A stretch of 64,000 bases of DNA, taken from Raja brachyura. Its lineage: Eukaryota. The notes beneath the pieces were generated by a model. That model was not told the DNA's origin. It saw nothing but the letters and a program-made list of their open reading frames with translations, and made no database searches. The position numbers were made by a program, and so were the translations under genes. The stretch's first letter is position 1. The number at the start of each line of letters is the position of its first letter. Shown here one piece after another: positions 1,255-64,000 of the stretch. The DNA is taken from assembly GCA_963514005.1 (NCBI GenBank), contig OY740798.1, forward strand, positions 25,296,001 to 25,360,000, written 5' to 3'.

Positions 1255-2062
1255 AGGCAGAGTGCGACTGTCCATATGGTGCCAGCACAACAACCTGGCC
1301 CTCAACACCAGCAAAACCAAGGAACTGATTGTGGACTTTGGAAAGAGTAGGATGGGGACCCACGGTCCTGTTTATATCAACGGGTCGATGGTTGAAAGGG
1401 TCAAGAGCTTCAAATTCCTGGGCGTGCACATCTGTGAAGATCTTTCCTGGTCCGAGAACACAGATGCAATTATTAAGAATGTTCATCAGCGCCTCTACTT
1501 CCTGAGAAGATTACGGAGAGTTGGTCTGTCAAGGAGGACTCTCTCTAACTTCTACAGGTGTACAGTAGAGAGCTTGCTGACTGGTTGCATCGTGGCTTGG
1601 TTCGGCAACTTGAGCGCCCTGGAGAGGAAAAGACTCCAAAAAGTAGTAAACACTGCCCAGTCCATCATCGGCTCTGACCTTCCTTCCATCGAGGGGATCT
1701 ATCACAGTCGCTGCCTCAAAAAGGCTGGCAGCATCATCAAGGACCCACACCACCTTAGCCACACACTCATCTCCCTTCTACCTTTGGGTAGAAGGTACAG
1801 GAGCCTGAAGACTGCAACAACCCGGTTTAGGAATAGCTACTTCCCCACAGCCATCAGGCTATTAAACCTGGCTCGGAACTCTGAACATTAATATCCCTCC
1901 ATCTGTTATTTGCACTTTATTAATTTATTAAGTCATGGTTGTATTTATGTATAGAATTGTAGTCAATGCCTTCGATGTTCTGTTGTGCTATGCAAAGAAA
2001 GATTTTCATTGTCCTGTCAGGGACACATGACAATAAACTCTTTTGACTTTTTGACTTTTGAT
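1255..2062 (+). mobile_element. Rex1/Babar-type non-LTR retrotransposon, 5'-truncated (RT C-terminus and 3' UTR)
   Basis: ORF 1262-1891 WCQHNNLALNTSKTKELIVDF...FKFLGVHI...ESLLTGCIVAWFGN; 3' end ACATGACAATAAAC followed by a (TTTGAC)n tail. Confidence 0.85.
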
Positions 2063-30163: not shown

Positions 30164-33100
30164 TAGCGATATTACAAAACCTACCTTCAGCGGCGCTACA
30201 AATCTGCCACTGCTTTTTTTTGGGGGGGGGAGCGGGAATAAAATGCAGGTTTGTATTGGTTGTCGAAGAGGGATTTCCTCGGGCTGCTAGCTGAAGAAGA
30301 AAAATCGTTCGCGCTTCCGTTCATGTTTTTTTTTAAAATTGCTGTACCTTTGCATCGCTGTATTGAACTTAAACGCAACTAAAAAAGCCTTCACCGTTTT
30401 CAACATCATGGATTGCAAGTGCAAGACAAAACAAAAGGTATGTCATTTATTTAACATGTTATTTTGCTTTTTGGTGTGACTTTATTTTAATCTCATGATC
30501 TTGCCTGCCGACATGGCTTAAAATTTACGGCAACGGCAATGTTCCAATCGATCACATCCACTCTAAAGATGATCAAATTCTTTTTTTTTGGACAATCATG
30601 TCAGAAGAGCATCTAAATCATCTAGATTTTGTGTTATTGTCTATCCATGATCAATATTTTCACACTAAATATCCACAACAGTTTTAGTCAGATGTATTGT
30701 GCAAAAAATAATGATTTTATCTTGAGAGTGGATGTTTCTGGACTAATTTATGGGAATTAAACATTAAATTCCTTGCATTTGAAATATCAATTCATGACAA
30801 AGTGAGATTTAAAAATCATGTTATATTGTGAAAGCGTGTGAATGGGATCAGTTTGTTATTTGTTATTTGGATACTTAGGCTATTAAAAAATAAACTTTTT
30901 CTTAAGAAATGGATAGATGTTTAGATCTAGTAATTGAATTTAGATGATTTTAATTGATTAGATTAATTTAATTGATTTGATGAAACTGATGAATATGAAT
31001 TTTTTGTTGGGTATTTACTATTTGTTTTAGTGTTTAACGTTATCATTTCTACCTTTTTTCTAAAACTCCAAATAATAACTTGTTTCTGTTAATGCTGTTC
31101 AGCGTGGTTTTTTTCTTTACATTTTAAACAGATGTCTCCCAAGAAGAGATGCAAAATTGTCAATCCAAATGCCCAGCAAAAGAGACTGATTTAGGCAGCA
31201 TTCGCAGAGATTATCCGAAATTGGACTACTCCAAATGTGATGATCTACAGGACATTCTTAATGGGAATGTAGTGGGCAGAAAGGCATGTCATGTGTGGTT
31301 TGAAGAGCAAAAACTTGTAGTTTACAATGCCAAAATTGAAAAGTTGAGGAAAAGCAAGGCTTATTGGTTACAATCTGAAGAGTATGATGATGCTACTGAT
31401 TATGATCTGCCAATGTACCAGCTAGCAGCTGATCTTCTCCATAAAGACTTGGTCTATTGCTAGAAATTGTAATTTATTTACCTATCTGTTACGGACTTAC
31501 AGCATATAATACAATAATATTAAAGTTCTGATCTTGAGAATATCACATTTTTGAATTTTCAAGGCAGTCTGGGTGTTTATTACCATTTCCGTCACAACGG
31601 TCAATTTTGTAATTAGCTACAATTAGGTAACTAACTAATTATATGCTTTCATTTCAGGTCATCCAAGTAAGCTGTTTCATATTTGTTTCAGAATGCTTCA
31701 ATCTATAATAACTGAAATTTTCATTCAGTTCTCTTAATTTTTAATAAAGTTATGGGCTTTTGACTCTCCTCGATCACAGCTTTTGTGTTTTAGTTCTGGT
31801 TATAAACTAAATCTTAGTAAGAGTGAGCTCTTTCCATTAAATAATCTAGTTTCGAATTATGGACAGTTTCCATTTAGATTGACTACTGAATGTTTTACTT
31901 ATTTAGGCATTAAGATGACCAAGAAACACAAGGATTTATTTAAAGCCAATTTTACGCCTTTAATTGACTACATCACACAACAGTTCACTAAGTGGTCACC
32001 AATGTCCTTATCTCTAATAAGCCAAATCAATGCTATTAAAATGTTTATCTTACCTAAATTTTTATACTTATTTCAGACGATACCAATTTTTATTCCTAAA
32101 TCTTTGATATCATTGGCTCCAAAATTTTCTTATATAAATGGCAGAATAAACATTCCAGCCTGAGTAAAAAATACTTACAGAAATCAAAAAAAGATGGTGG
32201 TTTGGCACTGCCGAACTGTAGATTTTACTATTGGGCAGTTAATGCTCCCTATTTAACGTTTTGTACAAAAGATTTAGAAGATACCCAATGTCCAGGATGG
32301 ATAAATCTTGAACGTGATTGTATGCAAGGGCTACCATTGGATTCTATTCTAGGGGCCTCGTTACCTTTTACAATTACGAGATTGAATAAATACACGACTA
32401 ACCCAATATTAAGACATACACTTCAAATATGGTTTCAATTTCGTAAGTTTTTTGGATTGAATGATTTAATTAATCGAGTCCTATCATATCTAATTTTTTC
32501 TTTCAACTTTCTAGCACTGCTCAAGCCTTTCTGTTATGGAAGAGGAAGGGATTAGTAGCTTTTCGTGATTTGTTTTCAGATGGTTGTTTTATGTCTTTTG
32601 AACAACTCCCCAATAAATATAATTTACCTAACTCACATTTTTTTAAGATATTTACGAATTAGACATTTTTTTTAGGGCTACTCTACCCTTTTTTCCATTA
32701 CCACATCAAACCGATATCTTGGAATTTTTTTTACATTTGAACCTTTATCAGAAGGGCTTAATAACGATTATTTATGAGTTAATTTTGAAATTTAAAAAAA
32801 GTACATTTGATAAAATTAAGAATGACTGGGAAAGAGAACTACAAATTTCTTTATCTATAGAAAAATGGGAGAGGATTCTTTAATTAGTTAATACTTCCTC
32901 AATGTGTGCAAGACACGCTTTGACACAATTCAAGGTAGTTCACAGAGCTCATAAGTCCAAAGATAAGTTAACTCGTTTTTATGGTCAAATACATCTTACC
33001 TGTGACAAATGTAATTCTGAAGTGGCCTCATTGACTCGTATGTTTTGGTCCTGCCCGCTTTTGGAAAAATATTGGAAATAAATTGTTAAACTATCTCTGT

Positions 33101-35170: not shown

Positions 35171-35280
35171 ATGTCCCGCTGTCTAAGGAAACACCCTTCC
35201 CCTCCCCGAGCAAGCTGCGCTGTGTCCCACAGAGGGAGACAGAGAGATGCAAGTCGTTCCTCTCCTCGCCCAACACCGGC

Positions 35281-35292
35281 AAAAGTGAAACC
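35281..35292 (+). promoter_or_regulatory. IRF-binding element / ISRE-like site in the GC-rich promoter of the B7-H6-like gene
   Basis: AAAAGTGAAACC matches the IRF1/2 consensus AAA(G/C)(T/C)GAAA(G/C)(T/C); ~80 bp upstream of the ATG. Confidence 0.65.
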
Positions 35293-35373
35293 AAGGCGGC
35301 GGCTGGCGGCGAGGGGGGAGCGGGGAGCGGGGAGCGGGAGCTCGGGCTCGGGGCAGGCTGGGCAGCGAGGGCC

Positions 35374-35440
35374 ATGGGGCGGCTGGGGAACCCACTGAGA
35401 CAACTCCTGCTCCTGCTGGTGATGTTGGCGCCACACTCAG
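35374..35440 (+). CDS. NCR3LG1: B7-H6 (NCR3LG1)-like gene exon 1, signal peptide
   Basis: GCCATGG Kozak context; MGRLGNPLRQLLLLLVMLAPHS; G|gtcag phase-1 donor; CpG island. Confidence 0.85.
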
Positions 35441-35827
35441 GTCAGAGCCGTGGCTGGGCTAGGGAGCGGGGGCCGAGAGGCCGCTTGGGTGGCAGAATGG
35501 GGAGCCCGGTGCCCGACCTTTCCCGGGGGCTGGTCGCTGCCTCGGGGGGTTTAGCCTGGCTTCATGGTCTGCACGGACATTGTGGGCCGAAGGGCTTGTT
35601 CCTCTGCTGTACTGTTCTATGTATAAAGATTAACGTGGTTCTGGTAGGCCGCAAGGCGTGTTCCTATGATATACTGTGCCATGTTCTGTGTATAAAGGCC
35701 AGCAAGGATATTGTCGGCCAAAGGGCCTGATCCTGGGCTACACTGTTCTATGTGTAGATGTGTAATAGCACAAACATTACGGGCTGACAGCTCTGTTCCT
35801 CCTCTGTACTGTTCTATGTGTAAATGT

Positions 35828-36125
35828 CAGGGTGGCACAGTGGTGCAATGGTAGAGTTGCGACCTTACAGTGCCACAGACCCTGGTTTGTTCCTGATTTT
35901 AGGTGCTGTCTATAAGGAGGTTGTCCGTTCTCCCTGTGACTGTGTGGGTTTTCTCCGGATATTCCGGTTTCCTCCCACACTCAAAGTACAAGTTTGTAGG
36001 TTAATTAGCTTCGGACAAAATTGTTCCTAGTGAGTAGGATAGTGTTAGAGTACGGGATTATAGCTGGTCTGCACTGACTCGGTGGGCCGAAGGGCCTATT
36101 TCCACATTGTTTCTCTAAAGTCTAA
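35828..36125 (+). mobile_element. tRNA-derived SINE (elasmobranch type)
   Basis: GGTGGCACAGTGG A-box-like head, CR1-like tail GGGCCGAAGGGCCT, (TCTAAAG)n end; homologous copies near 23250, 39440, 41465, 48840, 50100, 53330 and 60365. Confidence 0.8.
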
Positions 36126-36581
36126 AGCTTCTAAACTCAGCATAGATATTGTGGGCTGAACTGAAGGGCCTATTTCTCTGCTAAACTGTTTTATGTATAA
36201 TGGGTGGCCAAATGGCCCGATCTTGTACTGTACTATTTAAGATCTTTGGTGGGGGTGTCTTTGACAAGATCGTACTTGGGATGTTTTCTCTGGTGGGAGA
36301 GGCATGATCAAGGGGATATGGCTACTAAGTAAGGAGTCGGTCATAGTGCCATACAGCACGGAATGAGGCCTGTCGACCCACCTTGTCCATGCCGACCAAT
36401 GTGCTCCATCTAAGCTAGTCCCACCCATCCACATTTAGATCATTTTTGTAGGGTGCATTCTAACATGCAAATATTTTAACATATTTTAATATGTATATTT
36501 GTAAAAAAAGAAATACATATTTTAATATGTATTTAAAATATTTTTAATATTCTAATATGTACTTTTTTTTCCAATTTACAG

Positions 36582-36932
36582 GACAGTTGACATTGAAAGC
36601 AAGCAAAAGTCCAGCGGAAGTCATCCTGTACGAAAATGGACTTCTCGAGTGTGAGATTGCTAATCTCAGTGCGATTACTTTGAACCCAAATAATTTAGGC
36701 GTTTTATGGGCTTTTACCCATGGAACTAAAGAATTAAATATCTTTATGTATTCTGACGGAAAGATAACAAAGCAGTCGGAGGAAGCAGAGCTGTCTGAAA
36801 GCTCCATTTTAAATGGAAACATGTCACTTTTCCTGAGAAATGTTACGTTAAAACATTTTGGGGAATATCGCTGTGAGGTTGTTATTCCACCAAATTACAA
36901 AGCTTCTCTGACGGTAAAGCTTGAAGTTTTAG
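36582..36932 (+). CDS. NCR3LG1: B7-H6-like exon 2, IgV domain
   Basis: C..[27 protein letters not shown]...VKLEVL closely resembles B7-H6 [26 protein letters not shown]...VQLEVV; phase 1-1. Confidence 0.9.
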
Positions 36933-49389: not shown

Positions 49390-49716
49390 TATCTGCTCCC
49401 AAATTAAATGAAATTACTTGTGATCCTGTGAACCCTGAAGTCGAGAAGACATTGACTTTGTCCTGTGAAATAATGGATTTTTATCCAGCGAGTATTCAAA
49501 TTGACTGGCTTAGGGATGAAGTGAGAATAAATAAAAATCCCAAATATGTAATCGCTAACGAAGAATTGATGAATGAACACAGTCTCTACAGCCAAGTCAC
49601 CAAATTAACCTTGAAGCCAAGCACTCATGATCATCAACATGAATACAAGGTTGAAGTTTATCATTCAAAATCTTCCACCAAACCTCAGAAGCAATGCTTC
49701 CAGTTACTTCTTAAAG
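49390..49716 (+). CDS. NCR3LG1: B7-H6-like exon 8, post-TM IgC1-like domain 4 (F-strand Cys absent)
   Basis: LSCEIMDFYPASIQIDW...EYKVEVYH; tacag/gtgag; phase 1-1. Confidence 0.9.
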
Positions 49717-52073
49717 GTGAGTTAAGTTTCTCTTTCCGTTCTCAAGCTGTGGTAAAATGAATTCCAGCTGTGATTTGGAAATCATAATCAGCCAGAGCTG
49801 ATTCTAAGACCTGAAAAAGTTGATTGAGAGTTATTTGAGTGTAATAACATCATACTGGTGACATAGAATACGGCCCTTATGGTGTTGTTCCATAATAGAT
49901 TTTGTTTTTCTTTCATCATAAATTGCATGAGAGCAAGTTTTATTTTATTTTAACGATTTTGGGTAGTGATTTATGAATTTTGTAAAGGTGAATTACAGAA
50001 TTCACACAAACGGCAGTAACGTGGGACTTTGCTGTAATTTTCTAATATTGTATTTTTTTAAATTTCTATTGTTTTGAAAAGGAATAATTCAATTTTTGGG
50101 CAGTACAGTGACGTAGCTGCTAGAGCTGCTGCCTCACAGGGCCAGAGACCCAGCTTTAATCCTGACCTCGGGGACTGGCTGCGTGTGGAGTTTGCAGGCT
50201 CTCCGTGACTGTCGATTTTGTATGGGTGCCCCTTTTTCCTCCCGCATCCCAAATACATGCAGATTTGTACGCTACATGGCCTCTGTAAATTGCCCCTAGT
50301 GTGTAGGGAGACTATGAGAAAGTGGGATAACATAGAACTTGTGTGAACGGATGACTGATGGTCGGTGTGGATTCGGTTGGCGGAAGGACTTGTATCTCTA
50401 AAGTAAACTAAACTTCCCAAACCTCCACCACCTAGAATGACAACACTGGGGGTGTGGGAGCAAATGGAATTGATCTGACTTGGATATGTGCAATAGCATC
50501 ATAGAGTGATACAATGTGGAAACGGGCCCTTCAGCCCAACTTGCCCAAACTGGCCAACGTCCCAGCTACACGAGTCCCACCTGCCTGCACTTGGTCCATA
50601 GCCCTCCAAACCTATCCTATCCATGTACCTGTCTAAGTTTATTAAACGTTGGGATATTCCCAGCCTCAACTACCTCCTCTGGCAGCTTGTTCCAAACACC
50701 CACTACCCTTTGCGTGAAAAAGTTAATCCTCGGATTCCTATTAAATCTTTTCCCATTCACCTTGAACCTGTCCCCTAAGTGCTGCAATTCTTTTATTGGA
50801 ATGTATTATCCCTGCCTGAGTTTGCCACCCACTTGAGACCCACTTGTGCAGAGAGGGCAGTGTGATTCATTCTGCACATAGGTCTCACAAATGTTTTTTT
50901 TTATATACGAAAGAGTTCCGGTACACATATTGCTCCTTGCTTTTGGTGTCGAAAGCAGATTATCATCCTATAGGATGATAGGACTAGCCGAAGGGCCTGT
51001 TTCCATGCTGTACAGCACTTTGACTATGATTAAATGATGGAGCAGTGACAACTTTATAAAAATGACTGTGAATGTTTATCCACTTTATCCATGTCCCCTC
51101 GTCATCTTGTACTGTTACAGATCTCAGCATTGCTTCCTGATTTCTTGGATCCATAAAAAAAAATTTCCCCCCTTCAACAAGGAGCTTTTATTATATATTC
51201 ACAGTTTACAAAGTATTGTGTCATTCAAAACTGCTGTTCGTTCAGTTTGCAACACTGACCATCAGATTACGACATCATCAGCCCTATCCACGATGCACTC
51301 AAGCCTCTCATTACATCTTGGCAGCTAGTGACAGCTCGGTGGATGTAGAGTACCGTTAAATTTGTCTGAAATATGTAACGGTTATAAAAATACTTTAAAT
51401 ATATACGTAAATGTCTTAAACAAATATTAACACATAAAAACTCGAACAAATAATTAATACTAAAATTAAAATGCTGAATTTTCCTATTTCCACTGGATTG
51501 AAGGGGACAGTCATTCACGTTAATTTTTCTAGCAAACCTGAGCATGAAATACAAAGTGGATTGGACCTATCTTGTCACGCTTCCACCATTTAGTCAGAGA
51601 GTCGTAGAGTTGGCAAGCATAGAAACAGGCCCTTCGGCCTGCCTTGTCTATGCTGACTAATTTGGCAGTCTGGGAAAATCCAATTTTCCTGCATTTGGTT
51701 CATAGCCCTCTGAACATTTTCCTCTCCATACTTCTGTCCAATGTCTTTTAAACGTTATAATTACATCCGCTTCTATAGCTTCCGCTGGCAGCTCATTCCA
51801 GATATGGTCAACCCTCAGAATTTAAAAAATGGTCATCCCTTTAAGCCTAACCCGAATGCAGTGAGGGTGCTGGGGGTGGTGGTGGACAGTGGAAATAATG
51901 GCGTTTAAGAGGCTTTTAAATAGGCACATGGATATACAGGGAATGGAAGGATCACATGCAGGCAGATAAGAATTGGTCTTGGTATCATGATTGGCACAGA
52001 CATTTGTTGGCCGAAGGGCCCGTTCCAGTGCTGTACTATTCTATGTTTTAAATACATTTTCTTTTCTTTATAG

Positions 52074-52382
52074 GCTCACCAATATTTTCAGACTTCAAAA
52101 TGGTGCCAGAGATCCCATGGTTTGGTGAATATTTATCCATATCGTGTTCCGTACATGGCCTCTTAAGAAAGGATTTCATTTTTGAATGGTATAGAGGATC
52201 TGAGCCTGTGAAAAGTGGAGTAACTAATTCAAATTTTGTGCCTACTGGTGACAATTACAAAGTAGAGAGTTGCCTTAAATTTTTAGTAACCGCGGAAGAC
52301 TTTGAAAGAGAGTTAATCTTTCTGTGTAAAGACAGTTATAACAATGAAGCATTCAAAAGGCGTATTCAACTGCCCCTAAAAG
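52074..52382 (+). CDS. NCR3LG1: B7-H6-like exon 9, post-TM Ig-like domain 5
   Basis: LSISCSVHG...FEWYRG...NYKVESCLKF...ELIFLCKD; tatag/gtgag; phase 1-1. Confidence 0.85.
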
Positions 52383-54033
52383 GTGAGTGTGTTGTGAAAA
52401 TGATTTGTTTAACTATATTTTGATAAGTTATTATTCTAAATTTGTATATAACCAACATTGAAGACAGTAAAGGTTTTACAATGAGTGCAGAAGAATGGCT
52501 TTTGTTGTTGACACAAACACCCTTTTATCTACTTTCCATCTCTGGCCTTTGTCCACCCATCTGACAAAGAAAAACTCTCACCCAAATCTACCTATCATTT
52601 GCAAGGCTTTGTCCCACTCTCACTTGTCCAGCTTTCACTACCCCTGCTAAAATCAGTATGAAGAAAAGTTCCAAACTAAAACATTGCTTATCCACGTCTT
52701 CCAGAGACGCAGCCTGACACGCTGTTACTCCAGCACTTTGTATTTTTGTTTAGCTTTTGTTGTTCATCGCCTTAAGTGAATCGCAAAATCCTGGGGCGCC
52801 ACGTGCGACCGCGCTCCACTGCCTACACAGGTCAGGATCAAACCCAGGTCTCTGGCACTGTAAGGCAGCACAGCTATCAGGTGTCTAGAAGAGGTTTCAA
52901 GAATGATGTCTGGATTAGTGGGTAGTAGCTGTCAAGAGAGGTTTTTCTTTGGAACCGGAAATTGCAGGGAGACCTGTTGGAAGTGCCGGTATATAAAATT
53001 ATGAGAGGCAAAGATAAGTTAGACTGTTAAAGACGAACATACATAGCTTTAAAGTGAGATGGGCAAAGTTTAATGTGCGAGGCAAGGTTTTTTACACAGT
53101 GATTAGAGGGTGCCTTGAATATTGCTGCCCATGGTGGTGGTGGAGGCAGATATGTTAGTGACATTTCAGAGACTATTCGATAGGCACATGGATATACAGG
53201 GAATGGAGGGATATGGATCACATGCAGGCAGAGGAAATTGTGTTCGTTTTGCATAATGTTCAGCACAAACATTGTAGGCCAAACGGCCTGTCCCTATGCT
53301 GTACTGCTCTATTGTCTAATCAAAGGTGGGGCCTGACACTTCTTTGGGGTGTGGGAGAAAACAGGAACACCTGGAGGAAATCCACACAGTCTCATAGATA
53401 ATGTGCAAACTCCACACACAGACAGCACCTGAGGTCAGGATCAAATGTGGGTTTCTGGTGCTGAGGCACCAGCTCTGTATTTGGTAATGGGTCGTTAGTT
53501 TGAATTTGGGCCTGTGTGTCGATATTATTGGCACTCACTACAGAAATAGGGTATCACTGCAAAAAGGGTGGCACCATGGGGGGGGAAAAGCCAGAAGAGA
53601 GGTGGGGGCAGGACAAAGCCAGGCATATAATAGATGGACATAGGTGAGGTAGGTTTTTGAGTGTCAGATGGATGGACAAAGGTCAGAAATGTAAAAACAA
53701 AGTTTCAAAAGAGGGCAGAAGAGGCATGAAATTTGAAGCCAGAGGAAGTAGTGTGGGTGGATGAGGGCAAAGGGAAGGGGAAAGGAAGAATTGGGTGTGC
53801 ATCCAGGTGGGGCACAGGGGGGAGAGGGTTAAAAAAAAGGTGAGGGCAGTAAAAAGGGCAAGGGGTGTTTGTAAGGTTAATTACCGAAAAATGAAGTTTC
53901 CACTGTTCATAACGTTGGGTTGTAAGCTAACCAAGCAGAATAACATTATTTTGTTTGCCCAGGCCATTTTGGAACATAAAGTATGCATTAATTTAACTTG
54001 TATTTGATATTTGTGATTTCAATTTTTCCACAG

Positions 54034-54344
54034 CTGTGGCTCCTAAAGTATCATGTTTTAGCACCTGTGACAATGCTCAGCTCAAAATAGGTGGAAAATA
54101 TACCCTTACTTGCAAGATTGTGCATTTTTGCCCAGTGGATATAGAAGTTACATGGTGGAAGGGATGGAAAGTTTGCACGGATGATCAAATAATGGGAGAG
54201 CCCAAAATGGACAAAACAGGACTGTACTCTACAATCACAGAGATGCCAATTCTCATGGAAGAAAATTCGGTAACTTATGTTTGTGAAGTTCGACATGTAA
54301 AGACCAATGAAATTGTTGAGAAGCCATTCATACTGCGGGTTTAA
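54034..54344 (+). CDS. NCR3LG1: B7-H6-like exon 10, post-TM IgC1-like domain 6 and stop
   Basis: cacag|CT; LTCKIVHFCPVDIEVTW...TGLYSTIT...YVCEVRH...PFILRV*; the ten exons sum to 2895 nt = 964 aa + stop. Confidence 0.88.

Positions 54345-54828: not shown

Positions 54829-54831
<3 letters not shown>

Positions 54832-54863
<32 letters not shown>
54832..54863. repeat. (CA)n microsatellite
   Basis: Direct observation. Confidence 0.95.
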
Positions 54864-54865
<2 letters not shown>

Positions 54866-57559
54866 TCTTGGCACGCGCGCACACACATGCGAGGCTTTGG
54901 ACGCTTCAGCTGTGGGCTCTGTGGACAGTAATTAGCTCAGGATTCTTCCAGTTTCCAGCCCCGAGACGTGGACGTTTCTACTATGGGGCTGTTAGAATGA
55001 GTTAACTAGTGCAGATCTGAACCACAGATTTAAAATACAATGGACAACATAATGTAGGACAGGACACTTTCAAGCTGTAGTATGGAAACCAAGCTATTAA
55101 AACCAAGCAATATATAAATGATCTGCATTATATGCAACCTAAAACTTTGTATTCTTGGATGTATTAAACATTTTGTTCCCCCAATTGCCAGCAGTAAAAA
55201 GAGGGTGTCAATTAGTTAATAAAATTGCTTTATAACCTGAAGAAAGCATTTGGTCTCTGTAATATGAAGGATAGGTAACATCTACCATCGCCCGGCGGGT
55301 GCTTCAACATCTGGAGCCTCAATCACCTTGATGCAACAATTTGACTGCCTGACTGTGGGAGAAGAAGCAGGGCAAAGAGATAAGACCATTTGCCTTCCAT
55401 CACAGTGAGGAGGTGTCTGGAGGAGATTCACTGTGATGGATGTTTGTGTTAAATAGTGTGTTTTGTTGCTTTTGTTACTGTCATGCACAAAATTTTGTTC
55501 AAACTCGAATCGTTGTACCTGCATCAGACAGTTTTAATAACTTCTCCCGTTCATTTTATTCAAAGGAATGCATATCGATGTAGCATTTAACAGTGACAGT
55601 TAACACATCGTTTTTGTCTCAGTCAGAGGAATTAAGTGATAAACGACTCAAATCGTTCTGCAGTACACTACTCCTTAAACCCAATACTTTACAAAGCTTG
55701 TGATGAATATGGAATGGATGAGCGTGTATCATTAACAATGGGTGACATTTTCAGAGTCTAATTCTTTTAAGAATCTGAGCCAGCTGACCATGCATGCGGC
55801 CGGGATTCCGCAGCGCACGGTCAGATGGGAACTGATTGCAAAATACATGTTTCAGAAAACATGGTGGGGGGGGAATTGTCCCCCACCTCTGAAAACATGG
55901 TGGGGACTCGTCCCTCCTATACCCCCCCCCCCCCCCCCCTCCCCACGGGATTCCCGCCCATGCCTACCAACCCTGGCTTTCTTCTAACATACCGTTTCCT
56001 GCAATCATGCAATATCCTTCAAATACCTTGATTAGGTGGATGAAGTGTTTGTTTGGCCATCCTTGGACCCATTGTTTCTTTGATTGCATCAAGGTGAGCA
56101 AACTGTACTGATTAATTCTTTAACTTTGTAAACAACAAACATCTTGAACCTTGGACAATTGCTGAGCTAAAAAGCTGAGTTTAGCAAAAAGCATATGGGC
56201 CCATGAAGTGAATATCCATCACAGGGGCAAGAGAGTTTCAGACTCGCATTATCAAAGTTAATTTTCCTGCAGAATTTTCATTAGCAGTAGGTTTTTGTTT
56301 GTTACTGCAAAGTATTTATGTCACAATGTATGTAGAGTATGGTTGTATAAGTGTCAATGGAAATGATTGCTTTTCAATTTCAATTGACTTCTACTGTCAA
56401 AGTATCCGCTGTACTCTTAGGAGACAATGGTTGATTATTGCAAGGAAATTACATGGAAACATGCTTTCTGTCCCCTCTCTGTTTAAATCCAAGGCAGCTA
56501 TTTTTTTCTGCCTGTCAATTTCAAAAGTAACTTTAAAGTGATTCCCAAGTTGCACATTGAAATCGCATTATAACCAATTCGGCCCACACAATGTAAGTAA
56601 TGTCTCCAACCATTAAGTTGGTTATATTTAATCTGTGATAATGGAAATGTACATTATAGCAGAACAACTGTATTACAAAAAGTTTGTCAACCATTAATGC
56701 ATCAAGCTGTAGAAGTTTGGTTTAAAAGAACAGATTACTTCAATTCCCATTTCAGTTCATCAGATCTGCCCTGTCAGCAAATAGTGAACATACTTTGCAT
56801 ATCATATTATTGCCAGCTACAAGGGTTTAAAAAGAAATAAACATCAAAAAATTATATTTGTAAGCAATATGGCCACATTTGATTTATATGGGCACACCTG
56901 GTTCAATAACTGAAGTATATACAGAGGGATAAATTAATAAATGTACAAGATTGGCAATAAAGTGTAGGTGCATAAAATCAGTGTTTCCCACCTATGGCTT
57001 GCAAACAAATCATATTAAAATACAATTTTAACAAACATGATCAAAATCAACAGGGGAGGTATTATGCCTTGCGTACTTGGTGTGGGCGAGATGTAACTCT
57101 AAACTCTAGACCTTCCATTGTGGTTAATTTTTAAGTGTCCCCTGAAATCACCACCAAGCGATTAATTTAAGGGCAATTAGGGATGGGTAAGAGATGCTAA
57201 GCTTGTTATTGGTCCACTTAGTCCAATGACCGGCGGTGTCAGTGAACAATTATTCATAAGCGTCTTTTAAATTTGGTGGGTCAGGAGATACACATTGCAG
57301 CTAATGGTTGATCAGGCCTCAGATCTCTACTGTTTGTTTTAATCAATTAATGCGGTAATGATGCTCCCAGCTTTCTCCCTGATGATATGTTAGCATAAGA
57401 GCATGTTCTGTATACATGCATAACATGCTCTCCATGTTCCCAACGTAACTAAGTTGCCTTTGTGGAGCCAAGGGAAGTAATGGTCTTCCATTGTTCCACT
57501 GGGTTTTCCCCTTAAACCATGTGACCCCAGCTCTTCCCCACCCACATTATGGTCCTCAT

Positions 57560-59295
57560 ATCCCCCTCCTCCCTGACCACCCACCACCCCTATACTAGAC
57601 GTCACATCGGCCTCCGTCCACTCATCTGCCTTCCTCCGGCACCAACCCCCATCCTCTCGGATACCAACACCCCTGACCCACCCCCTCTCGGATACCAAAC
57701 AATCTGTCCTTAGCAGAGGCCTCACCTTTGTTCCCCTTCGTCCCCACCTCAATGAGCTCCACGTCTGACACGATGTGGAGCTCTTCTTCCGTCGCCTCCG
57801 CATTAAAGCGTTTTTCCATGGAAAGGAGTCTTCGCGCTCCCAGTGATGACCCCCTTCTCTCATCTCCAACAGACCCCCTCCTCTTGGACTCCCCCTCATG
57901 GCCATCTACGGCTTTAGACCTTTCTACTTTAAACTGCCGGCGGGACATCAACCTCATCAACTTTTCAACTCCCTTTCTCACTCTAACTTCTCCCCCTTGA
58001 ATGTCAAGACTTCCATTCACTCTGCAACAACCCAGACTGGGTGATCAAACCTGCCGACAAGGGAGGTGCCGTGGTAGTCTGGCGTGCTGATCACTATAAG
58101 GCTGAGGCCACGCGCCAACTCTCAAGACGCCTCCTCCTACTTATCCTTGGACCATGACCCCACAGACGAGCACCAGGCCACTATCTCTAACATTATCACT
58201 GGCTTCATCACTTCCGCCTCCCTGCTCTCCCAAGCCGCCAACCTCATCGTTCCCCAGCTCCACACAGCCCGACTTTACCTTCTCCCCAAAATCCACAAAC
58301 CTGACTGTCCTGGCAGACCCATTGTTTCTGCCTGTTCATGCCCCACCGAACTTATTGCCACATACCTCGACTCCATCCTACCCCTAGTTAAATCCCTCCC
58401 TACCTATGTTCCAGACACCTCACACTCTCGTCGTCTCTTCCATGACTTCCGTTTTCTAGGCCCCCATTCCCTCATCTTCACCATGGACGTCCAGTCATTC
58501 TACACCTCAATCCTCCACCAGGAGGGTCTTAAAGCCCTCAGTTTGTTCCTCGACCGCAGAACTAACCAATCCCCGTCTACTGATACTCTCCTCAACTAAC
58601 GAAGCTGGTCCTTACCCTTAACAACTTTTTATTTAACTCCCATTTCTTCCAAATCCAAGGCTTGGCTATGGGCATGCGTATGGGCCTAAGCTATGCCTGC
58701 CTCTTTGTAGGATACGTCGAATAATCCTTGTTCGAGGCATACCATGGCCCTATCCCCGAACTCTACCTCTGCTACATTGACAACTGCATTGGTGCTACCT
58801 CCTGCACCCATACATAACTCACTGACTTCATCCATTTCACCACTAACTTCTATCCGGCACTCAAATACACCTGGACCATTTCCAACACCTCCCTACCATT
58901 TCTAGACCTCACTATCTCCATCACAGGTGACAGACTACTGACCGACATGCACTATAAACCCACTGACTCCCATGGCTATCTGCACAACACTTCTTCCCAC
59001 CCTGCTTCCTGTAAGGACTCCATCCCCTACTCCCATTCCTCCGTCCACGCCACATCTGCACCCAGGATGAGGTGTTCCACACCAGGGCATCGATGATATC
59101 CTCATTCTTTAAGGAACGGGGGTTCCCCTCTTCTACTATAGATGAGGCTCTCACCACAGTCTCTTCTATACCCTGTAACTCTGCTCTCCCTCCCCAACCC
59201 CCCACTCGTAACAACGGCAGAGTCCCTCTTGTCCTCACCTTCCACCCTACCAGCCGTCACATACAACAAATAATCCTACAAATAATACAACAAAT
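57560..59295 (+). mobile_element. Penelope-like retroelement, degraded RT region
   Basis: VLSRGLTFVP, VIKPADKGGAVVVW, LYLLPKIHKPDCPGRPIVS, FTMDVQSFYT, VPLVLTFHP; multiple stops and frameshifts. Confidence 0.9.
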
Positions 59296-59299
59296 AATC

Positions 59300-59503
59300 A
59301 AAGGTAGTCGTAGATAGTCTTCATCATAGTCGAAGGAGGTCGTCTTCACTCTCCACTATTCGGTGTCCAATTTTCCACGAACTAGTCATAGCTAGTCGAA
59401 GCTAGTCTTCAACACAGTCGAAGGAAGTCGAAGGTCTTCAACATGACATTTTTTCAAACTCTCCTAAACTCGCCAATTAGGTCACCCAAGTGGGACAACC
59501 CCT
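59300..59503. mobile_element. PIF/Harbinger-like MITE right arm
   Basis: Short TAGTCG/GTCTTC subrepeats ending AAGTGGGACAACCCCT followed by TAA. Confidence 0.5.
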
Positions 59504-61437
59504 TAATGGTCTTCCAAGATTTTCTATAACATCATCAAGGATTTGTCCCACCCCGCTCTATCTTCAGGCAGAAGGTACAGAAGCTTGAAAATGTGCTCCA
59601 TCAGACTCGGGAACAACATCTTCCCCTCTGTTATCAAGCTTCTGAATTGTCCTTCCATATGCAAGGGTACTGTCCAATTCAAACAAAAAATGTGGATGCA
59701 TATATGGATAGCAGGTGTTATTTAGAGGGCTTTGGGCCAAATGCAGGCAATTTGAACTAATTGCGCCCCGTAATTAAAATGGAATAGGAGTGAGGGAGGA
59801 AGCCATAGAATCCATTCCTCAGCTTCGTTAAAAGATGGGCTCTCTCGCCATGGCCGTCTTTCTACGATGGACGACTTGTTTGTCTGCAACTCATTGGTAT
59901 GTTATCGTAAATTGTAAGAATTGTATTCGTTTTTTTGGAAATCCTTTATAAATTATGATCACGGTTATTCCTCAGAATTAAATGTGCCTCATTTATAGTG
60001 CCCTATAGTGAGAGTGCTTGTAGATACTAATAACAGATAAGACTTAAAGTCTTGACTTGGGTTTAGGGCTCTCGGGCGGTAAAATTCAATATCAGCACAC
60101 CCCAAACCTCTAGTGACATAATTGTCTTTATAACATCATTTTTATAACACCATCTTCACCATTTGTTATGGCAATGAGTTAAAGAATTTGAAATTAGGAA
60201 TTGGTTATTGAATGCAATTTGGGGGGGGAAACAAAATCAGTTTTTCTCCTATAAGGGAGCAAACAGAATCAATGTGGCTAAATATCTACCAACAAATAGT
60301 TTCAGTTGATTTTAAAAGTGGATTGTCCATTGAAACAAATAGATAAAGGGTTCACAAAATAAAAAGGCAGAGCTGGTAGAGTTGCTGCCTCACAGCACCA
60401 ATGGCCGGGGATGCTGTCTGCATGGAGTTTGTAGTTTTGGCCATGACCAGGTGCTCCGCCTTCCTCCCACATCTCACAAACATGCACATTTGTAGAGTAA
60501 TTGTCCTCTGTAAATTGCCGAGCGTGTAGGGAATGGATGAGAAAGTGAGATAACATAGAACAAGAACAGCTGATTGGTGTCGGCATGGATGTGGTGGGCT
60601 GAAGGGCCTACTACGATGTATGTCATTTAAAAAAAACCGTGTTGATATACTTTTTGAGGCAATACATATGTGAGGAATGTAGAAAGCATTGTGCTTTCTT
60701 CCACTCTTACCTCAGAATTTATTTGCTGTTAACACTGGAACAACGTTGAAAGAAAACAAGTAAGTCTGGAATCAATATAGTCTTTAGACCCTTGCAGTAA
60801 AAAATAATGAATTCATAGTTCATAGGAGTAAAATTAGGCCATTTGGCTCATTGAGTCTCCTCCGCAAATCTATCAATCCCATTCTCCTGCTTTCTCCCCA
60901 TAACCTTTGGCACCCTTACTAATCAAGAATCTGTCAATCTCCTCATTCAAAATACCCTATGACAGATGACAGCTCTGGAAGCGGATACAATAAAGGGAAA
61001 GGGAAATTATGTGGTTCAAGCAGAATTTTAAAACATCTGCACAATGGATCATAGAGATTTGGGATCCTTGCTGAAAAATATAATGGGGCTGAAACAAACC
61101 TATAACTGTATTTTGATTTAGTTTTAAAAGATCTAGTGTACCATGTTTCAAGCTGTTTGATAATCTCTTTCCAATTCTATCAAACTGAAACATAAATTAC
61201 TGGAGGAACTCAGCGCGCCAGACAGCATCCATGGAGGGAATGGACAGGTGATGTTTCAGTTTGGGACCCTTCTTCCCTATCCATTCCCTCCACAGATGCT
61301 GCCAGACCCAATGAGTACCTCATGCATTTTGTGTTTTTGTCACGATTCCAGCATCGGCAGTTCCTTGTGCCTTTACCATCAAACTAGCAGGGTACATATT
61401 TAAAGAAAATATCTGTTTTCCTCAAACTATCTTAATG

Positions 61438-64000
61438 TAGCAATGTTACAAAATTTTGAGATTAAAAAAATCAAGTCTGCAATTTATCCCATCAGATAAA
61501 GCATAAGAAGAAGTTTAATTTAACACCTAATTCACTTTCATATCTTCAGTATTAAAAAAAGGTATGGCCATTTTCATACTCGGAAATTAGCATCTTGTTC
61601 CCTATTGCTTTTGCATTGACTTAACACAAAAGCTGTGGTCGAGGACAGTCAAAAGCCCATAACTTTCATAAAAATTAAGAGAAATTTTTGAAAAATTTCA
61701 GTTATTATAGATTGAAGCATTCTGAAACAGATATAAAACATCTAACTTCGATGACCTGATATTAAAGCATATAATTAGTTAATTACCTAATTGTAGCTAA
61801 TTACAAAATTGACCGTTGTGACGGCAATAGTAATAAACACCCAGACTGCCTTGAAAATCCAAAAATGTGATATTCTCAAGATCAGAACTTTAATATTATT
61901 GTATTATATGCTGTAAGTATTATGGGTAAATTGAATGGATTAAAGGCCGATAAATCCCCAGGGCCAGATAGGCTGCATCCCAGAGTACTTAAGGAAGTAG
62001 CTCCGGAAATAGTGGATGCATTAGTGATAATCTTTCAAAACTCTTTAGATTCTGGAGTAGTTCCTGAGGATTGGCAGGTAGCAAACGTAACCCCTCTTTT
62101 TAAGGAGGGGAGAGAGAAAACGGGGAATTACAGACCAGTTAGTCTAACATCAGTAGTGGGGAAACTGCTAGAGTCAGTTTTTAAAGATGGGATAGCAGCA
62201 CATTTGGAAAGTGGTGAAATCATTGGACAAAGTCAGCATGGATTATGGAGGCTGATTAGGAAAAGGGGAGATGCAGCGCGACCTGGGTGTTATGGTACAC
62301 CAGTCATTGAAGGTAGGCATGCAGGTGCAGCAGGCAGTGAAGAAAGTGAATGGTATGTTAGCTTTCATAGCAAAAGGATTTGAGTATAGGAGCAGGGAGG
62401 TTCTACTTCAGTTGTATAGGGTCTTGGTGAGACCACACCTGGAGTATTGCGTACAGTTCTGGTCTCCATATCTGAGAAAGGACATTATTGCCATAGAGGG
62501 AGTGCAGAGAAGCTTCACCAGACTGATTCCTGGGATGTCAGGACTGTCTTATGAACAAAGACTGCATAGACTCGGTTTATACTCTCTAGAATTTAGGAGA
62601 TTGAAAGGCGATCTTATAGAAACTTACAAAATTCTTAAGGGGTTGGACAGGCTAGATGCAGGAAGATTGTTCCCGATGTTGGGGAGGTCCAGGACAAGGG
62701 GTCACAGCTTAAGGATAAGGGGGAAATCCTTTAGGACCGAGACGAGAAGGACTTTTTTCACACAGAGTGGTGGGTCTCTGGAACTCTCTGCCACAGAGGG
62801 TAGTTGAGGTCAGTTCATTGGCTATATTTAAGAGGGAGTAAGATGTGGCCCTTGTGGCTAAGGGGATCAGTGGGTATGGAGAGAAGGCAGGTGCGGGAAA
62901 CTGAGTTGGATGATCAGCCATGATCATATTGAATGGCGGTGCAGGCTCGAAGGGCCGAATGGCCTACTCCTGCACCTAATTTCTAGGTTTCTATGTTTCT
63001 ATAAGTCTGCAACAGACAGGTAAATAAACAACAATTTCTAGCAATAGACCAAGTCTTTATGGAGAAGATTAGTTGCTAGCTGGTACATTGGCATATCATA
63101 TTCAGTGGCATCATAATACTCCTCAGATTGGAACCAATAAGAAACTCTGTACACCTTGTTTTTCCTCAACTTTTCAACTTTGCCATTGTAAACTACAAGT
63201 TTTTGCTCTTCAAACCACGCATGACATGCCTTTCTGCCCACTACTTTCCCATTAAGAATGTCCTGTAGATTCCATTTCTTAAGAAAAGGATATATTTTGT
63301 AAAGAGCCTAAGTATCCAAATAACAAACTAATCCCATTCACACAAGAATTCACAATATAACATGATTTTTAAATCTCACTGTCATTAATTCATATGCCAG
63401 ATGGAAGGAATTTGATGTTTAATTCCCATAAATTAATCTAGAAACATCTACTCAATATAATCAATTAAAAAAAAAAATTTTGCTGACTAAAACTGATATT
63501 TAGTATCAAAATATTGACTATGGGTAGACAATAACACAAAATGTAGACGATTTAGATGCTCTTATGATATGATTGTCCGAAAAAAAGAACATTTAAATCA
63601 TCTTGCGGGTGGGTTTTTCTGGAGCACGATCGACTGGAACGTTGCATTTGCGGTGAATTTGACCCCATATCGGCAGGAAAAACATTGCCGGTTCGTATAG
63701 GGCCCAAATAACATTTTCGCAACATAAAATTTGATTAAAGCCATCCCAAGAAGCAAGTTTATATGTAAAATATACGACTTACCCGTTGTTTTGTCCCGTT
63801 CATGCGATCCGTCACGTTGTCGGCGTTGAGGGCGGTAGAAGTCGCTTTTTTATTTTAATCAAAATATTAAATTGTTTAGCAATTTAAAAAAAAAAAAAAA
63901 AAAACGGGAACGGAATTCGGATTGATTATTCTTCAGCAGCTCGCAGCCCGAGGAAGTCCACCTCCGACAGGCAGGATTTAATGCATTTTAATCCGACCAC
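61438..64000 (-). mobile_element. Non-autonomous DNA transposon, copy 3 (runs off the window end)
   Basis: Starts TAGCAATGTTACAAAA; colinear with copy 1; coding remnant 63038-63270 (-). Confidence 0.88.
61919..63002 (+). mobile_element. CR1 LINE (internally deleted) nested in transposon copy 3
   Basis: KSPGPDRLHPRVLKE, NYRPVSLTSVVGKLLE, VRPHLEYCVQFWSP; (TTTCTATG)n-like tail. Confidence 0.92.

What the first reader, a model, noticed from the sequence alone, without database searches (positions are those of the whole stretch)
35374..54344. B7-H6-like type I receptor with six C1-type Ig domains on the cytoplasmic side of its only TM helix
Seen: ten exons with canonical GT-AG sites, all introns phase 1, splice into one open 964-aa frame: SP-IgV-IgC1-TM-(Ig)x6-stop. 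No second hydrophobic segment is visible after exon 4, and R/K residues follow the TM (MRYNYK). Known: the V and C1 ectodomain closely resembles B7-H6, the ligand of the NK receptor NKp30. C1-set domains (CxxxxFYP..I.V.W...YxCxVxH) are normally extracellular or luminal modules of Ig, TCR, MHC, B2M and tapasin, and human B7-H6 has a Gag-like tail instead. Inference: about 675 residues of C1-like domains would sit in the cytosol, a highly unusual topology that could act as a signalling scaffold, an intracellular pathogen sensor or a decoy. Similar B7H6-like genes may already have been noted in some non-mammalian vertebrates, so novelty needs a literature check.
Basis: partly seen in the sequence, partly recalled or inferred. 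Interest (0 to 1): 0.92.

Follow-up and report, generated by a model that had tools for sequence, protein, structure and literature searches.

The report
B7-H6-like gene with Ig-domain tail
This is a real ten-exon gene of the B7-H6 immune-ligand family in a cartilaginous fish, in which six antibody-type (C1) domains follow the only membrane-spanning segment; the layout is conserved from sharks to alligators but I found no description of it, and it predicts that these normally extracellular domains sit inside the cell.

Summary
Ten GT-AG exons, all in phase 1, add up to 2895 nt (964 codons plus a stop). They encode a signal peptide, a V-set domain, a C1-set domain, one TM helix and six more C1-set domains, with no second hydrophobic segment.

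It is not a fused gene model:
- Orthologues of 941-974 aa with the same layout exist in 13 cartilaginous fishes.
- Homologues occur in bichirs, coelacanth, lungfish, amphibians, a turtle and alligators, where NCBI names them NCR3LG1.
- A 949-aa ORF on a 3.9-kb run-assembly contig from a related skate matches every exon in order, including exon 4 to exon 5.

The ectodomain of that orthologue, when modelled, superposes on human B7-H6 (TM-score 0.87).

Topology is inferred, not shown. Standard rules put the six domains in the cytosol. Across the family the canonical cysteine pair survives in 51% of post-TM domains, against 91% of pre-TM domains and 100% of controls, which fits a cytosolic position. 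Within cartilaginous fishes, however, four of the six domains keep the pair.

Annotated isoforms in a caecilian and a horn shark skip exactly the TM exon, so a secreted 8-Ig form is also likely.

I found no description in the searchable literature. Two key subscription papers were not held. No reads could be laid on this window.

The parts
35374..35440 (+). Exon 1: start codon and signal peptide (22 codons plus 1 base), donor CAG|gtcaga, inside a GC-rich region
   Evidence: the N-terminus matches the Rhinoraja orthologue P0152
36582..36932 (+). Exon 2: V-set Ig domain with three N-x-S/T sequons and no J-like FGxG motif
   Evidence: Pfam V-set E 1.3e-7; best full-length PDB sequence match is B7-H6/NCR3LG1, E 3e-6; 85% identical to P0149
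39089..39415 (+). Exon 3: membrane-proximal C1-set Ig domain of the ectodomain
   Evidence: Pfam C1-set E 1.1e-8; 94% identical to P0149; in the orthologue model the V-C1 pair superposes on B7-H6 chain 6yjp_E, TM-score 0.87
41224..41340 (+). Exon 4: 117-nt symmetric (phase 1-1) exon encoding the only TM helix plus the basic/aromatic stop-transfer flank MRYNYK; a candidate cassette exon
   Evidence: Kyte-Doolittle mean 2.48; flank motif conserved from shark to alligator; exactly this exon is absent from annotated isoforms of Microcaecilia and Heterodontus homologues
41341..41419 (+). Start of intron 4: read-through of the exon 4 donor meets a stop after 10 codons, and an ATTAAA lies at 41414. 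This could give a short-tailed membrane form by intronic polyadenylation (hypothetical).
   Evidence: no transcript evidence
44589..45002 (+). Exon 5: post-TM domain D1, C1-set with a ~35-residue insert between the C and E strands; begins about 8 residues after the TM
   Evidence: Pfam C1-set; 106 homologues in the 1.84-billion-protein library, most with the match at about residues 280-430; the insert is disordered in the AF2 model of the orthologue
46928..47290 (+). Exon 6: post-TM domain D2, C1-set; the canonical Cys pair is kept in 13-14 of 14 cartilaginous-fish orthologues
   Evidence: nearest solved sequences are Ig mu and gamma heavy-chain constant domains
47745..48053 (+). Exon 7: post-TM domain D3, C1-set with an FYP motif; Cys pair invariant in the orthologues
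   Evidence: Pfam C1-set E 2.2e-11
49390..49716 (+). Exon 8: post-TM domain D4, C1-set lacking the F-strand cysteine (Val instead); the same loss is seen in all 14 cartilaginous-fish orthologues and in lungfish and reedfish homologues
52074..52382 (+). Exon 9: post-TM domain D5, the most divergent C1-set domain; its canonical Cys pair is present only in batoids
   Evidence: Pfam C1-set 22.8 bits against a cut-off of 21
54034..54344 (+). Exon 10: post-TM domain D6, C1-set; the stop codon comes directly after the last strand and no TM follows
   Evidence: the orthologues end at the same point
55096..55223 (+). Candidate polyadenylation signals for the long mRNA (ATTAAA at 55096 and 55163, AATAAA at 55218)
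   Evidence: motif match only

Best explanation
The locus is one gene, in a cartilaginous fish that is most likely a skate. It belongs to an old, uncharacterised branch of the B7-H6 (NCR3LG1)-like family.

Shown:
- Its main mRNA in a related skate joins all ten exons.
- The product has a cleavable signal peptide, a B7-H6-like V-C1 ectodomain, one strongly hydrophobic TM helix with a basic/aromatic flank, and, about 8 residues later, six C1-set Ig domains ending at the stop codon.

Inferred:
- The protein inserts as a type I membrane protein. The V-C1 pair is outside, where it probably engages an NKp30-type receptor. The roughly 675-residue Ig array is in the cytosol, where it would act as a folded docking or sensing platform. 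This is comparable in logic to the B30.2 domain of butyrophilins or the Gag-like tail of human B7-H6.
- Because the TM exon is a 117-nt phase 1-1 cassette, skipping it gives a secreted 8-Ig-domain form of the same gene. Both forms probably exist.
For: - Gene model: splice sites, phases and the exon sum agree, and Pfam assigns the domains.
- Transcript support: the ORF P0149 is 949 aa on a 3886-nt contig assembled from a public sequencing run. The gene spans 19 kb in this window, so the contig can only be spliced RNA. The ORF matches each window exon in order at 73-94% identity. The blocks abut by one split-codon residue, including E4 to E5, and the ORF ends where E10 ends.
- Conservation of the layout: 13 cartilaginous-fish orthologues of 941-974 aa share it. 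About 55 homologues from bichir, coelacanth, lungfish, caecilian, newts, frogs, turtle and alligator have a TM at about residues 230-350 followed by 3-15 C1 domains and no second TM. The TM-flank-'VPPKV' junction is conserved.
- B7-H6 likeness: the ectodomain of the orthologue model superposes on B7-H6 (TM-score 0.87, rmsd 2.3 Å, 26% identity).
- Cytosolic side: positive charges follow the TM, and some homologues have juxtamembrane cysteines there. Both canonical cysteines are kept in 58/64 pre-TM C1 domains but only 143/279 post-TM domains, against 51/51 in multi-C1 proteins with a C-terminal TM run through the same pipeline. The fold-defining Trp is kept in 91% of post-TM domains. N-glycosylation sequons number 1.31 per 100 aa before the TM and 0.66 after it.
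- Secreted form: isoforms lacking exactly the TM exon are annotated in Microcaecilia (953 vs 916 aa) and Heterodontus (1541 vs 1510 aa).
Against:
- Topology is untested at the protein level.
- Within cartilaginous fishes the canonical cysteines of D1, D2, D3 and D6 are conserved in 13-14 of 14 species, as strongly as the core Trp. Several non-canonical cysteines are conserved too. This is what disulfide-bonded, secreted domains look like.
- The sequon deficit after the TM is weak once composition is allowed for: observed/expected is 1.18, against 1.30 in extracellular controls.
- The function of the tail and binding to NKp30 are pure inference.
Confidence: 0.6

Rival explanations
1. The six C-terminal C1 domains work only outside the cell. 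In this view the functional product is the TM-skipped, secreted V-C1-(C1)x6 glycoprotein, a soluble multi-Ig ligand or decoy. The TM-containing long mRNA gives a membrane form whose cytosolic tail is unfolded, degraded or merely tolerated.
For: The TM exon is symmetric (117 nt, phase 1-1), and TM-less isoforms are annotated in two distant species. The canonical cysteine pairs of D1-D3 and D6, and extra cysteines, are near-invariant across 14 cartilaginous fishes. One D2 sequon (HNxS) is kept in 11/14. The nearest solved relatives of the tail domains are secreted Ig heavy-chain constant domains.
Against: The skate run-assembly contig runs straight through the TM exon, so TM inclusion dominates in that sample. 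The TM helix and its flank are conserved in about 55 homologues, always directly followed by D1. Half of all post-TM domains in the family have lost one or both canonical cysteines, including long-lived single-Cys states, which no extracellular control domain shows.
Confidence: 0.2
2. The main membrane form is short. Exon 4 is used as a terminal exon through read-through of its donor and polyadenylation in intron 4, giving V-C1-TM plus a 16-residue tail. Exons 5-10 are then used mainly with exon 4 skipped.
For: The reading frame stops 10 codons past the exon 4 donor, and an ATTAAA lies 74 nt downstream.
Against: An early stop and an A/T-rich hexamer in an intron are expected by chance. The skate transcript ORF and all annotated orthologues join E4 to E5. 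No short-form protein turned up: the search with exon 5 for proteins of 75-240 aa found nothing, although that search would not find a form lacking exon 5.
Confidence: 0.07
3. The tail is luminal or extracellular even in the TM-containing form, through an unconventional topology. One route would be signal-peptide-less isoforms in which the TM acts as a type II signal anchor; another would be a missed membrane segment.
For: Cysteine conservation in the cartilaginous-fish orthologues. N-terminally truncated isoforms without a signal peptide are annotated in alligator and Heterodontus.
Against: No second hydrophobic segment exists in E5-E10 or downstream, nor in about 55 homologues. The charge distribution around the TM (acidic before, basic after) favours a cytosolic C-terminus.
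Confidence: 0.06
4. Two separate genes, exons 1-4 and exons 5-10, have been wrongly fused by reading frames that happen to be compatible.
For: All IgSF exons are phase 1-1, so any neighbouring Ig exons stay in frame. Intron 4 is 3.2 kb long and full of repeats.
Against: A continuous transcript-derived ORF in a related skate spans all exons. Orthologues of the same length occur in 13 species, and the six tail domains are positionally orthologous out to lungfish and caecilian. Nothing in these relatives suggests a leader exon before E5.
Confidence: 0.02

Closest known systems
Human B7-H6 (NCR3LG1), ligand of the NK receptor NKp30
   Same: Signal peptide, V-set plus C1-type Ig ectodomain and a single TM. 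The V exon's best full-length match among solved structures is B7-H6 (E 3e-6). The orthologue's modelled ectodomain superposes on chain 6yjp_E at TM-score 0.87, rmsd 2.3 Å and 26% identity. NCBI names alligator and elephant-shark family members NCR3LG1 or NCR3LG1-like. Both proteins carry a large folded module after the TM.
   Different: A quick tree puts the window gene in a sister lineage to the one holding the alligator NCR3LG1. NKp30 binding is untested.
Butyrophilins (e.g. BTN3A1): B7-related V-C ectodomain, TM, cytosolic B30.2 sensor domain
   Same: A B7-type two-Ig ectodomain coupled through one TM to a large folded cytosolic domain. This is the model for inside-out sensing that I propose by analogy (established knowledge of BTN3A1; inference for this gene).
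   Different: There is no PRY/SPRY (B30.2) match in any exon. The tail is an array of Ig domains. No ligand is known.
UrIg2 / UrIg and Ig heavy chains (IgM, IgW, IgNAR) of cartilaginous fish
   Same: Non-rearranging or rearranging genes with one V followed by many C1-set exons, all in phase 1. The tail domains' nearest solved sequences are Ig heavy-chain constant domains. The UrIg2 V-C1-C2-C3 structure (9dmx) is among the fold matches. UrIg2 is described in PMC12227049.
   Different: Those proteins have a VJ-type V domain, and the TM, if present, is at the C-terminus, so all C1 domains are extracellular. Here the V has no J motif, the TM lies between the first and second C1 domains, and the protein stops right after the last one. 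In the same pipeline those proteins keep the Cys pair in 51/51 domains, against 51% here.
Cytosolic tandem Ig arrays (titin, obscurin, myosin-binding protein C; I-set)
   Same: Rod-like strings of Ig domains working in a reducing compartment, often without the canonical disulfide. The top whole-chain fold match is titin I65-I70, which mainly reflects domain number.
   Different: Those are I-set domains of soluble muscle proteins without a signal peptide or TM. Here the domains score as C1-set, and to my knowledge no member of that set works in the cytosol.

Membership tests
B7-H6 / NCR3LG1-like (B7 family) | N-terminal V-set domain followed by a C1-type Ig domain in the ectodomain | tested here: met
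   Pfam V-set (E2) and C1-set (E3). B7-H6 is the best full-length PDB sequence match to E2. The orthologue model against 6yjp_E gives TM-score 0.87.
B7-H6 / NCR3LG1-like (B7 family) | Cleavable signal peptide and a single type I TM helix after the C domain | tested here: met
   Hydropathy of E1 and E4 and no other hydrophobic segment; basic flank after the TM. Met at the sequence level only; membrane insertion itself is not tested.
B7-H6 / NCR3LG1-like (B7 family) | One-to-one orthology with mammalian NCR3LG1 | tested here: inconclusive
   A quick ML tree has two old lineages. The window gene's group falls with Protopterus_1 and Microcaecilia, while the alligator 'NCR3LG1' falls in the other lineage. 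The tree holds no mammalian sequence, its root is a midpoint, and synteny was not examined.
B7-H6 / NCR3LG1-like (B7 family) | Binding to NKp30 (NCR3) | not testable with these tools
   No NKp30 sequence of this species was in hand; a binding assay is needed.
B7-H6 / NCR3LG1-like (B7 family) | Gag-like cytoplasmic tail, as in the human protein | tested here: not met
   All six post-TM exons are C1-set by Pfam and none has a retroviral Gag match.
Pfam C1-set (PF07654) | HMM score above the gathering cut-off (21 bits) | tested here: met
   E3 35.7, E5 32.3, E6 40.3, E7 44.4, E8 42.8, E9 22.8 and E10 35.0 bits.
Pfam C1-set (PF07654) | Conserved B-strand Cys, C-strand Trp and F-strand Cys | tested here: met
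   All three are present in E3, E5, E6, E7, E9 and E10. E8 has Val in place of the F-strand Cys.
Pfam C1-set (PF07654) | Extracellular or luminal location (true of all characterised members, to my knowledge) | not testable with these tools
   The predicted topology places E5-E10 in the cytosol in the TM-containing form (inference). Protein-level tests are needed.
UrIg / UrIg2 / Ig heavy-chain type | VJ-type V domain with a J-like FGxG motif and a split leader | tested here: not met
   The E2 translation ends ...ASLTVKLEVL with no FGxG. Family features are taken from PMC12227049.
UrIg / UrIg2 / Ig heavy-chain type | TM (if any) after the last C domain, so that all C1 domains are extracellular | tested here: not met
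   The TM exon lies between the first and second C1 exons, the stop follows D6, and there is no hydrophobic stretch downstream.
Butyrophilin | Cytosolic B30.2 (PRY/SPRY) domain | tested here: not met
   No PRY or SPRY match in any exon at E up to 1.

The most novel reading that the evidence does not exclude
Jawed vertebrates ancestrally had a class of B7-family surface ligands whose cytosolic part is an array of 3-15 C1-set Ig domains. If so, this would be (to my knowledge) the first case of the antibody/MHC-type constant domain working in the cytosol. The array would act as an intracellular sensor or scaffold that controls display or signalling of an NKp30-type ligand. Going by the taxa seen here, it would have been replaced by a Gag-derived tail in mammals and perhaps lost in teleosts and birds, though absence there was not tested. 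A conserved TM-exon switch would export the same domains as a soluble protein.
Probability: 0.45. Interest if true: 0.9.

Novelty: new variant of a known kind. Interest (0 to 1): 0.74.

Why it matters
- **A break in a long-standing rule.** To my knowledge, C1-set domains are known only outside the cell or in the secretory lumen. A conserved family that places them after a stop-transfer helix would break that rule. If the domains prove luminal instead, it would reveal an unrecognised topology or isoform switch.
- **Evolution of the NKp30-B7-H6 axis.** The result suggests that the Gag-like tail of the human ligand replaced an older folded tail. It also suggests that non-mammalian ligands may couple an intracellular state to NK-type recognition, as butyrophilins do for gamma-delta T cells.
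- **Annotation.** Dozens of 'uncharacterized protein' entries from sharks to crocodilians can be grouped into one family with two old lineages.
- **Testability.** The topology question can be settled directly with tagged constructs.

Tried and rejected
- **RNA reads on the window.** There is therefore no junction evidence from this species. Those places were sent to no search tool afterwards. Local scripts that read window.fa did cover them, namely the regex for poly(A) motifs.
- **Inspecting the transcript contig.** The P0149 contig could not be inspected, so its RNA origin is inferred from its length (3886 nt for a 2847-nt ORF, against a 19-kb gene).
- **Short-protein search.** The search for homologous proteins with exon 5 alone found nothing among proteins of 75-240 aa.
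- **Glycosylation sequons as a topology test: inconclusive.** Density after the TM is half that before it. Observed/expected, however, is 1.18, against 1.30 in extracellular controls. The recurrent tail sequons sit where Ser/Thr is structurally fixed, as in the KATLTC and DITVEW-type motifs.
- **Two-gene or fusion artefact: rejected**.
- **Missed second TM or downstream TM exon: rejected**.
- **UrIg2-type or Ig heavy-chain identity: rejected** (no J motif, TM position).
- **Exon 4 splice sites.** They are only slightly weaker than the rest (pyrimidine count 14/20, donor match 6/8), so they say little about cassette use.
- **Literature.** Seven full-text searches ran (an eighth call, 76, failed on a term that was too short). 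None found a description of Ig domains after the TM in B7-H6-like genes. Flajnik et al. 2012 (Immunogenetics 64:571) and Ohta & Flajnik 2015 were not held, so prior mention cannot be excluded.
- Full-length analyses used database orthologues.

Full report
**Observation**

Their acceptors and donors lie at:

| Exon | Coordinates |
|---|---|
| E1 | 35374-35440 |
| E2 | 36582-36932 |
| E3 | 39089-39415 |
| E4 | 41224-41340 |
| E5 | 44589-45002 |
| E6 | 46928-47290 |
| E7 | 47745-48053 |
| E8 | 49390-49716 |
| E9 | 52074-52382 |
| E10 | 54034-54344 |

- Every intron is GT-AG and phase 1.
- The lengths sum to 2895 nt, which is 964 codons plus a TAA stop.
That count is arithmetic, each exon was searched by reference, and every full-length analysis used proteins returned by the databases.
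- Pfam calls E2 V-set, and calls E3 and each of E5-E10 C1-set above the curated cut-off.
- E4 carries the only hydrophobic segment (19-residue Kyte-Doolittle mean 2.48), followed by MRYNYK. No window in E5-E10 exceeds 0.92, and nothing hydrophobic is open in the + frames downstream to the end of the window.
- An alignment of the seven C1 exons shows the Cys-Trp-Cys core in all but E8, where the F-strand Cys is Val.

**Is it one gene?**

I could not lay reads. I sent those places to no search tool afterwards. Local scripts that read window.fa did cover them (the regex for poly(A) motifs).

Protein databases answered the question instead.

- Exon 5 alone, searched against 1.84 billion representative proteins, gave 106 hits. 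Most are proteins of about 700-1500 aa with the match at about residues 280-430.
- In about 55 of these hits a single hydrophobic helix at residues 230-350 is preceded by V and C1 domains. It is followed by 3-15 further C1 domains, with no second helix.
- The names I could read cover these groups:
  - sharks, rays and the elephant shark;
  - bichir and reedfish, coelacanth and lungfish;
  - a caecilian, newts and frogs;
  - a turtle and alligators.
- Nearly all are 'uncharacterized protein'. The alligator and elephant-shark members are named NCR3LG1 or NCR3LG1-like.
- A second search, seeded with the sawshark orthologue, found same-layout orthologues of 941-974 aa in 13 cartilaginous fishes.

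One hit, P0149, is a 949-aa ORF recorded only from a run-assembly ('Logan') contig of 3886 nt.

- The gene spans 19 kb here, so a contig that short holding a 2847-nt ORF must be spliced RNA.
- P0149 matches every window exon in order at 73-94% identity. The blocks abut by the single split-codon residue, including E4 to E5, and it ends where E10 ends.

Transcripts do not stop after exon 4, exon 4 is not always skipped, and no second TM exon exists.

**What the ectodomain is**

- Among solved structures, the best full-length sequence match to the V exon is B7-H6 (E 3e-6).
- An AlphaFold2 model of P0149, built on a 25-sequence family alignment, has mean pLDDT 83. It shows eight confident Ig sandwiches, a helix at residues 253-268 and a disordered insert in D1.
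- Its V-C1 pair superposes on B7-H6 from the NKp30 complex (6yjp_E) at TM-score 0.87, rmsd 2.3 Å and 26% identity.
- 'B7-H6-like' therefore holds.
- A quick maximum-likelihood tree suggests two old lineages, each with cartilaginous-fish and lobe-finned or tetrapod members. The careful search did not finish, the tree is midpoint-rooted and it contains no mammalian sequence.
- In that tree the window gene sits in the lineage with a lungfish and a caecilian protein. The alligator 'NCR3LG1' sits in the other lineage. I therefore do not claim one-to-one orthology with B7-H6.

**Age and constraint of the tail**

- The six post-TM domains are positionally orthologous. E5 to E10 hit, in order, the first to sixth post-TM domains of the sawshark and lungfish proteins, and (E10 excepted) of the caecilian and reedfish proteins too.
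- They are old duplicates of one another, at most 35% identical.
- The junction is conserved from shark to alligator: the helix, then a short Y-x-[KR]-[YF]-x-[KR] flank, then V-P-P-K-V-type residues that start an Ig A strand.

**Which side of the membrane?**

This step is inference. A cleavable signal peptide plus one strongly hydrophobic helix, with acidic residues before it and basic residues after it, predicts a type I protein with a cytosolic C-terminus. I looked for evolutionary footprints of the compartment.

*Disulfide cysteines.* I used an HMM built from the window's own C1 exons and scored the B- and F-strand positions in every domain of the 55 family proteins.

| Domain set | Both canonical cysteines kept |
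|---|---|
| Pre-TM C1 domains | 58/64 |
| Post-TM C1 domains | 143/279 |
| Control domains: multi-C1 proteins with a C-terminal TM, from the same hit list and pipeline | 51/51 |

- Among the post-TM domains, 94 are single-Cys and 42 have neither cysteine.
- The C-strand Trp is kept in 91% of post-TM domains, so the fold is retained while the disulfide is dispensable. That pattern fits a reducing compartment.
- Against this, within the 14 cartilaginous-fish orthologues the canonical cysteines of D1, D2, D3 and D6 are conserved in 13-14 species. Several extra cysteines are conserved as well.
- D4 lacks the F-strand Cys in all of them, and D5 has the pair only in batoids.

*N-glycosylation sequons.* There are 1.31 per 100 aa before the TM (observed/expected 1.72) and 0.66 after it (1.18). 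Extracellular controls give only 1.30, and the recurrent tail sequons lie where Ser/Thr is structurally fixed. This test is inconclusive.

**A second form**

- The TM exon is 117 nt and phase 1-1.
- In two distant homologues the annotation holds isoform pairs that differ by exactly this exon:
  - Microcaecilia, 953 versus 916 aa, with 37 residues including the helix missing;
  - Heterodontus, 1541 versus 1510 aa, with 31 residues missing.
- To my knowledge NCBI's pipeline builds alternative isoforms only from transcript alignments, so a secreted V-C1-(C1)n form probably exists alongside the membrane form.
- This would explain the mixed cysteine signal. The same domains may be exported in one isoform and cytosolic in the other.
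- A third possibility has no support beyond motifs: read-through of the exon 4 donor (stop after 10 codons, ATTAAA at 41414).

**Comparison with known systems**

- The nearest family is B7-H6/NCR3LG1. The ectodomain and TM match; the tail does not.
- The nearest working analogy is the butyrophilins, which have a B7-type ectodomain and a folded cytosolic sensor. No B30.2 domain is present here.
- UrIg2, UrIg and the Ig heavy chains of cartilaginous fish also string many C1 exons after one V (PMC12227049). They differ in having a VJ-type V and, where a TM is present, carrying it at the C-terminus.
- Cytosolic Ig arrays such as titin are I-set domains and are not membrane proteins.

**Novelty**

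- The proteins are already in the sequence databases as predictions, so the gene itself is not new.
- Seven full-text searches found no paper that describes C1 domains after the TM in this family.
- The two most relevant subscription papers were not held, so an earlier remark cannot be excluded.
- I rate it a new variant of a known kind. The main claim, a cytosolic C1 array, has about even odds and is directly testable.

Noticed in passing
window 31149-31463 (+) and 63038-63241 (-): Two copies of the same ORF module (...GRKACH.WFEEQKLVVYN.K.EKLRK...LLHKDLVYC).
   Followed up: no
window 39572-39808 (+), about 41400-41773 (+), 50058-50420 (-), 60302-60586 (-): Several copies of one SINE-like repeat, recognisable by the pseudo-ORF motif ...SSMLSHFLIHSLHTR.NLQR...CGRK...KLHTDS. 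They lie in introns 3, 4 and 8 and downstream of the gene.
   Followed up: no
window 42141-43331 (+), 57390-59320, 61922-62807 (+), 1262-1891 (+), 14158-14514 (-): Fragments of LINE-type reverse-transcriptase ORFs (motifs such as FADDTK, LQLYRA.VRPHLEYCVQFWSP). One sits inside intron 4, between the TM exon and exon 5.
   Followed up: no
window 37986-38166: GC-rich minisatellite in intron 2 (periods of 34 and 42 nt, 2-4 copies, 80-84% matches). It produces long spurious ORFs on both strands.
   Followed up: partly
window 35200-35560: GC-rich stretch around exon 1 with a GCGGGGA x4.7 microrepeat at 35306-35338; a likely CpG-island promoter of the gene.
   Followed up: no
proteins P0119, P0121 (Heterodontus) and P0110, P0111 (Alligator): Annotated isoforms of family members that lack the signal peptide (alligator), or the signal peptide and V domain (Heterodontus), but keep the TM and the tail. 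If real, the TM would be their first targeting signal and their topology could differ.
   Followed up: no
proteins P0002 (Dendropsophus, 2158 aa), P0131 (Xenopus tropicalis, 2597 aa), P0097, P0104: Frog members of the family have greatly expanded tails: up to about 15 matched C1 stretches after the TM in P0002. The number of tail domains is therefore plastic in amphibians but fixed at six in cartilaginous-fish lineage A.
   Followed up: no
window 54830-54880: A (CA)n microsatellite about 0.5 kb downstream of the stop codon, inside the putative 3' UTR.
   Followed up: no
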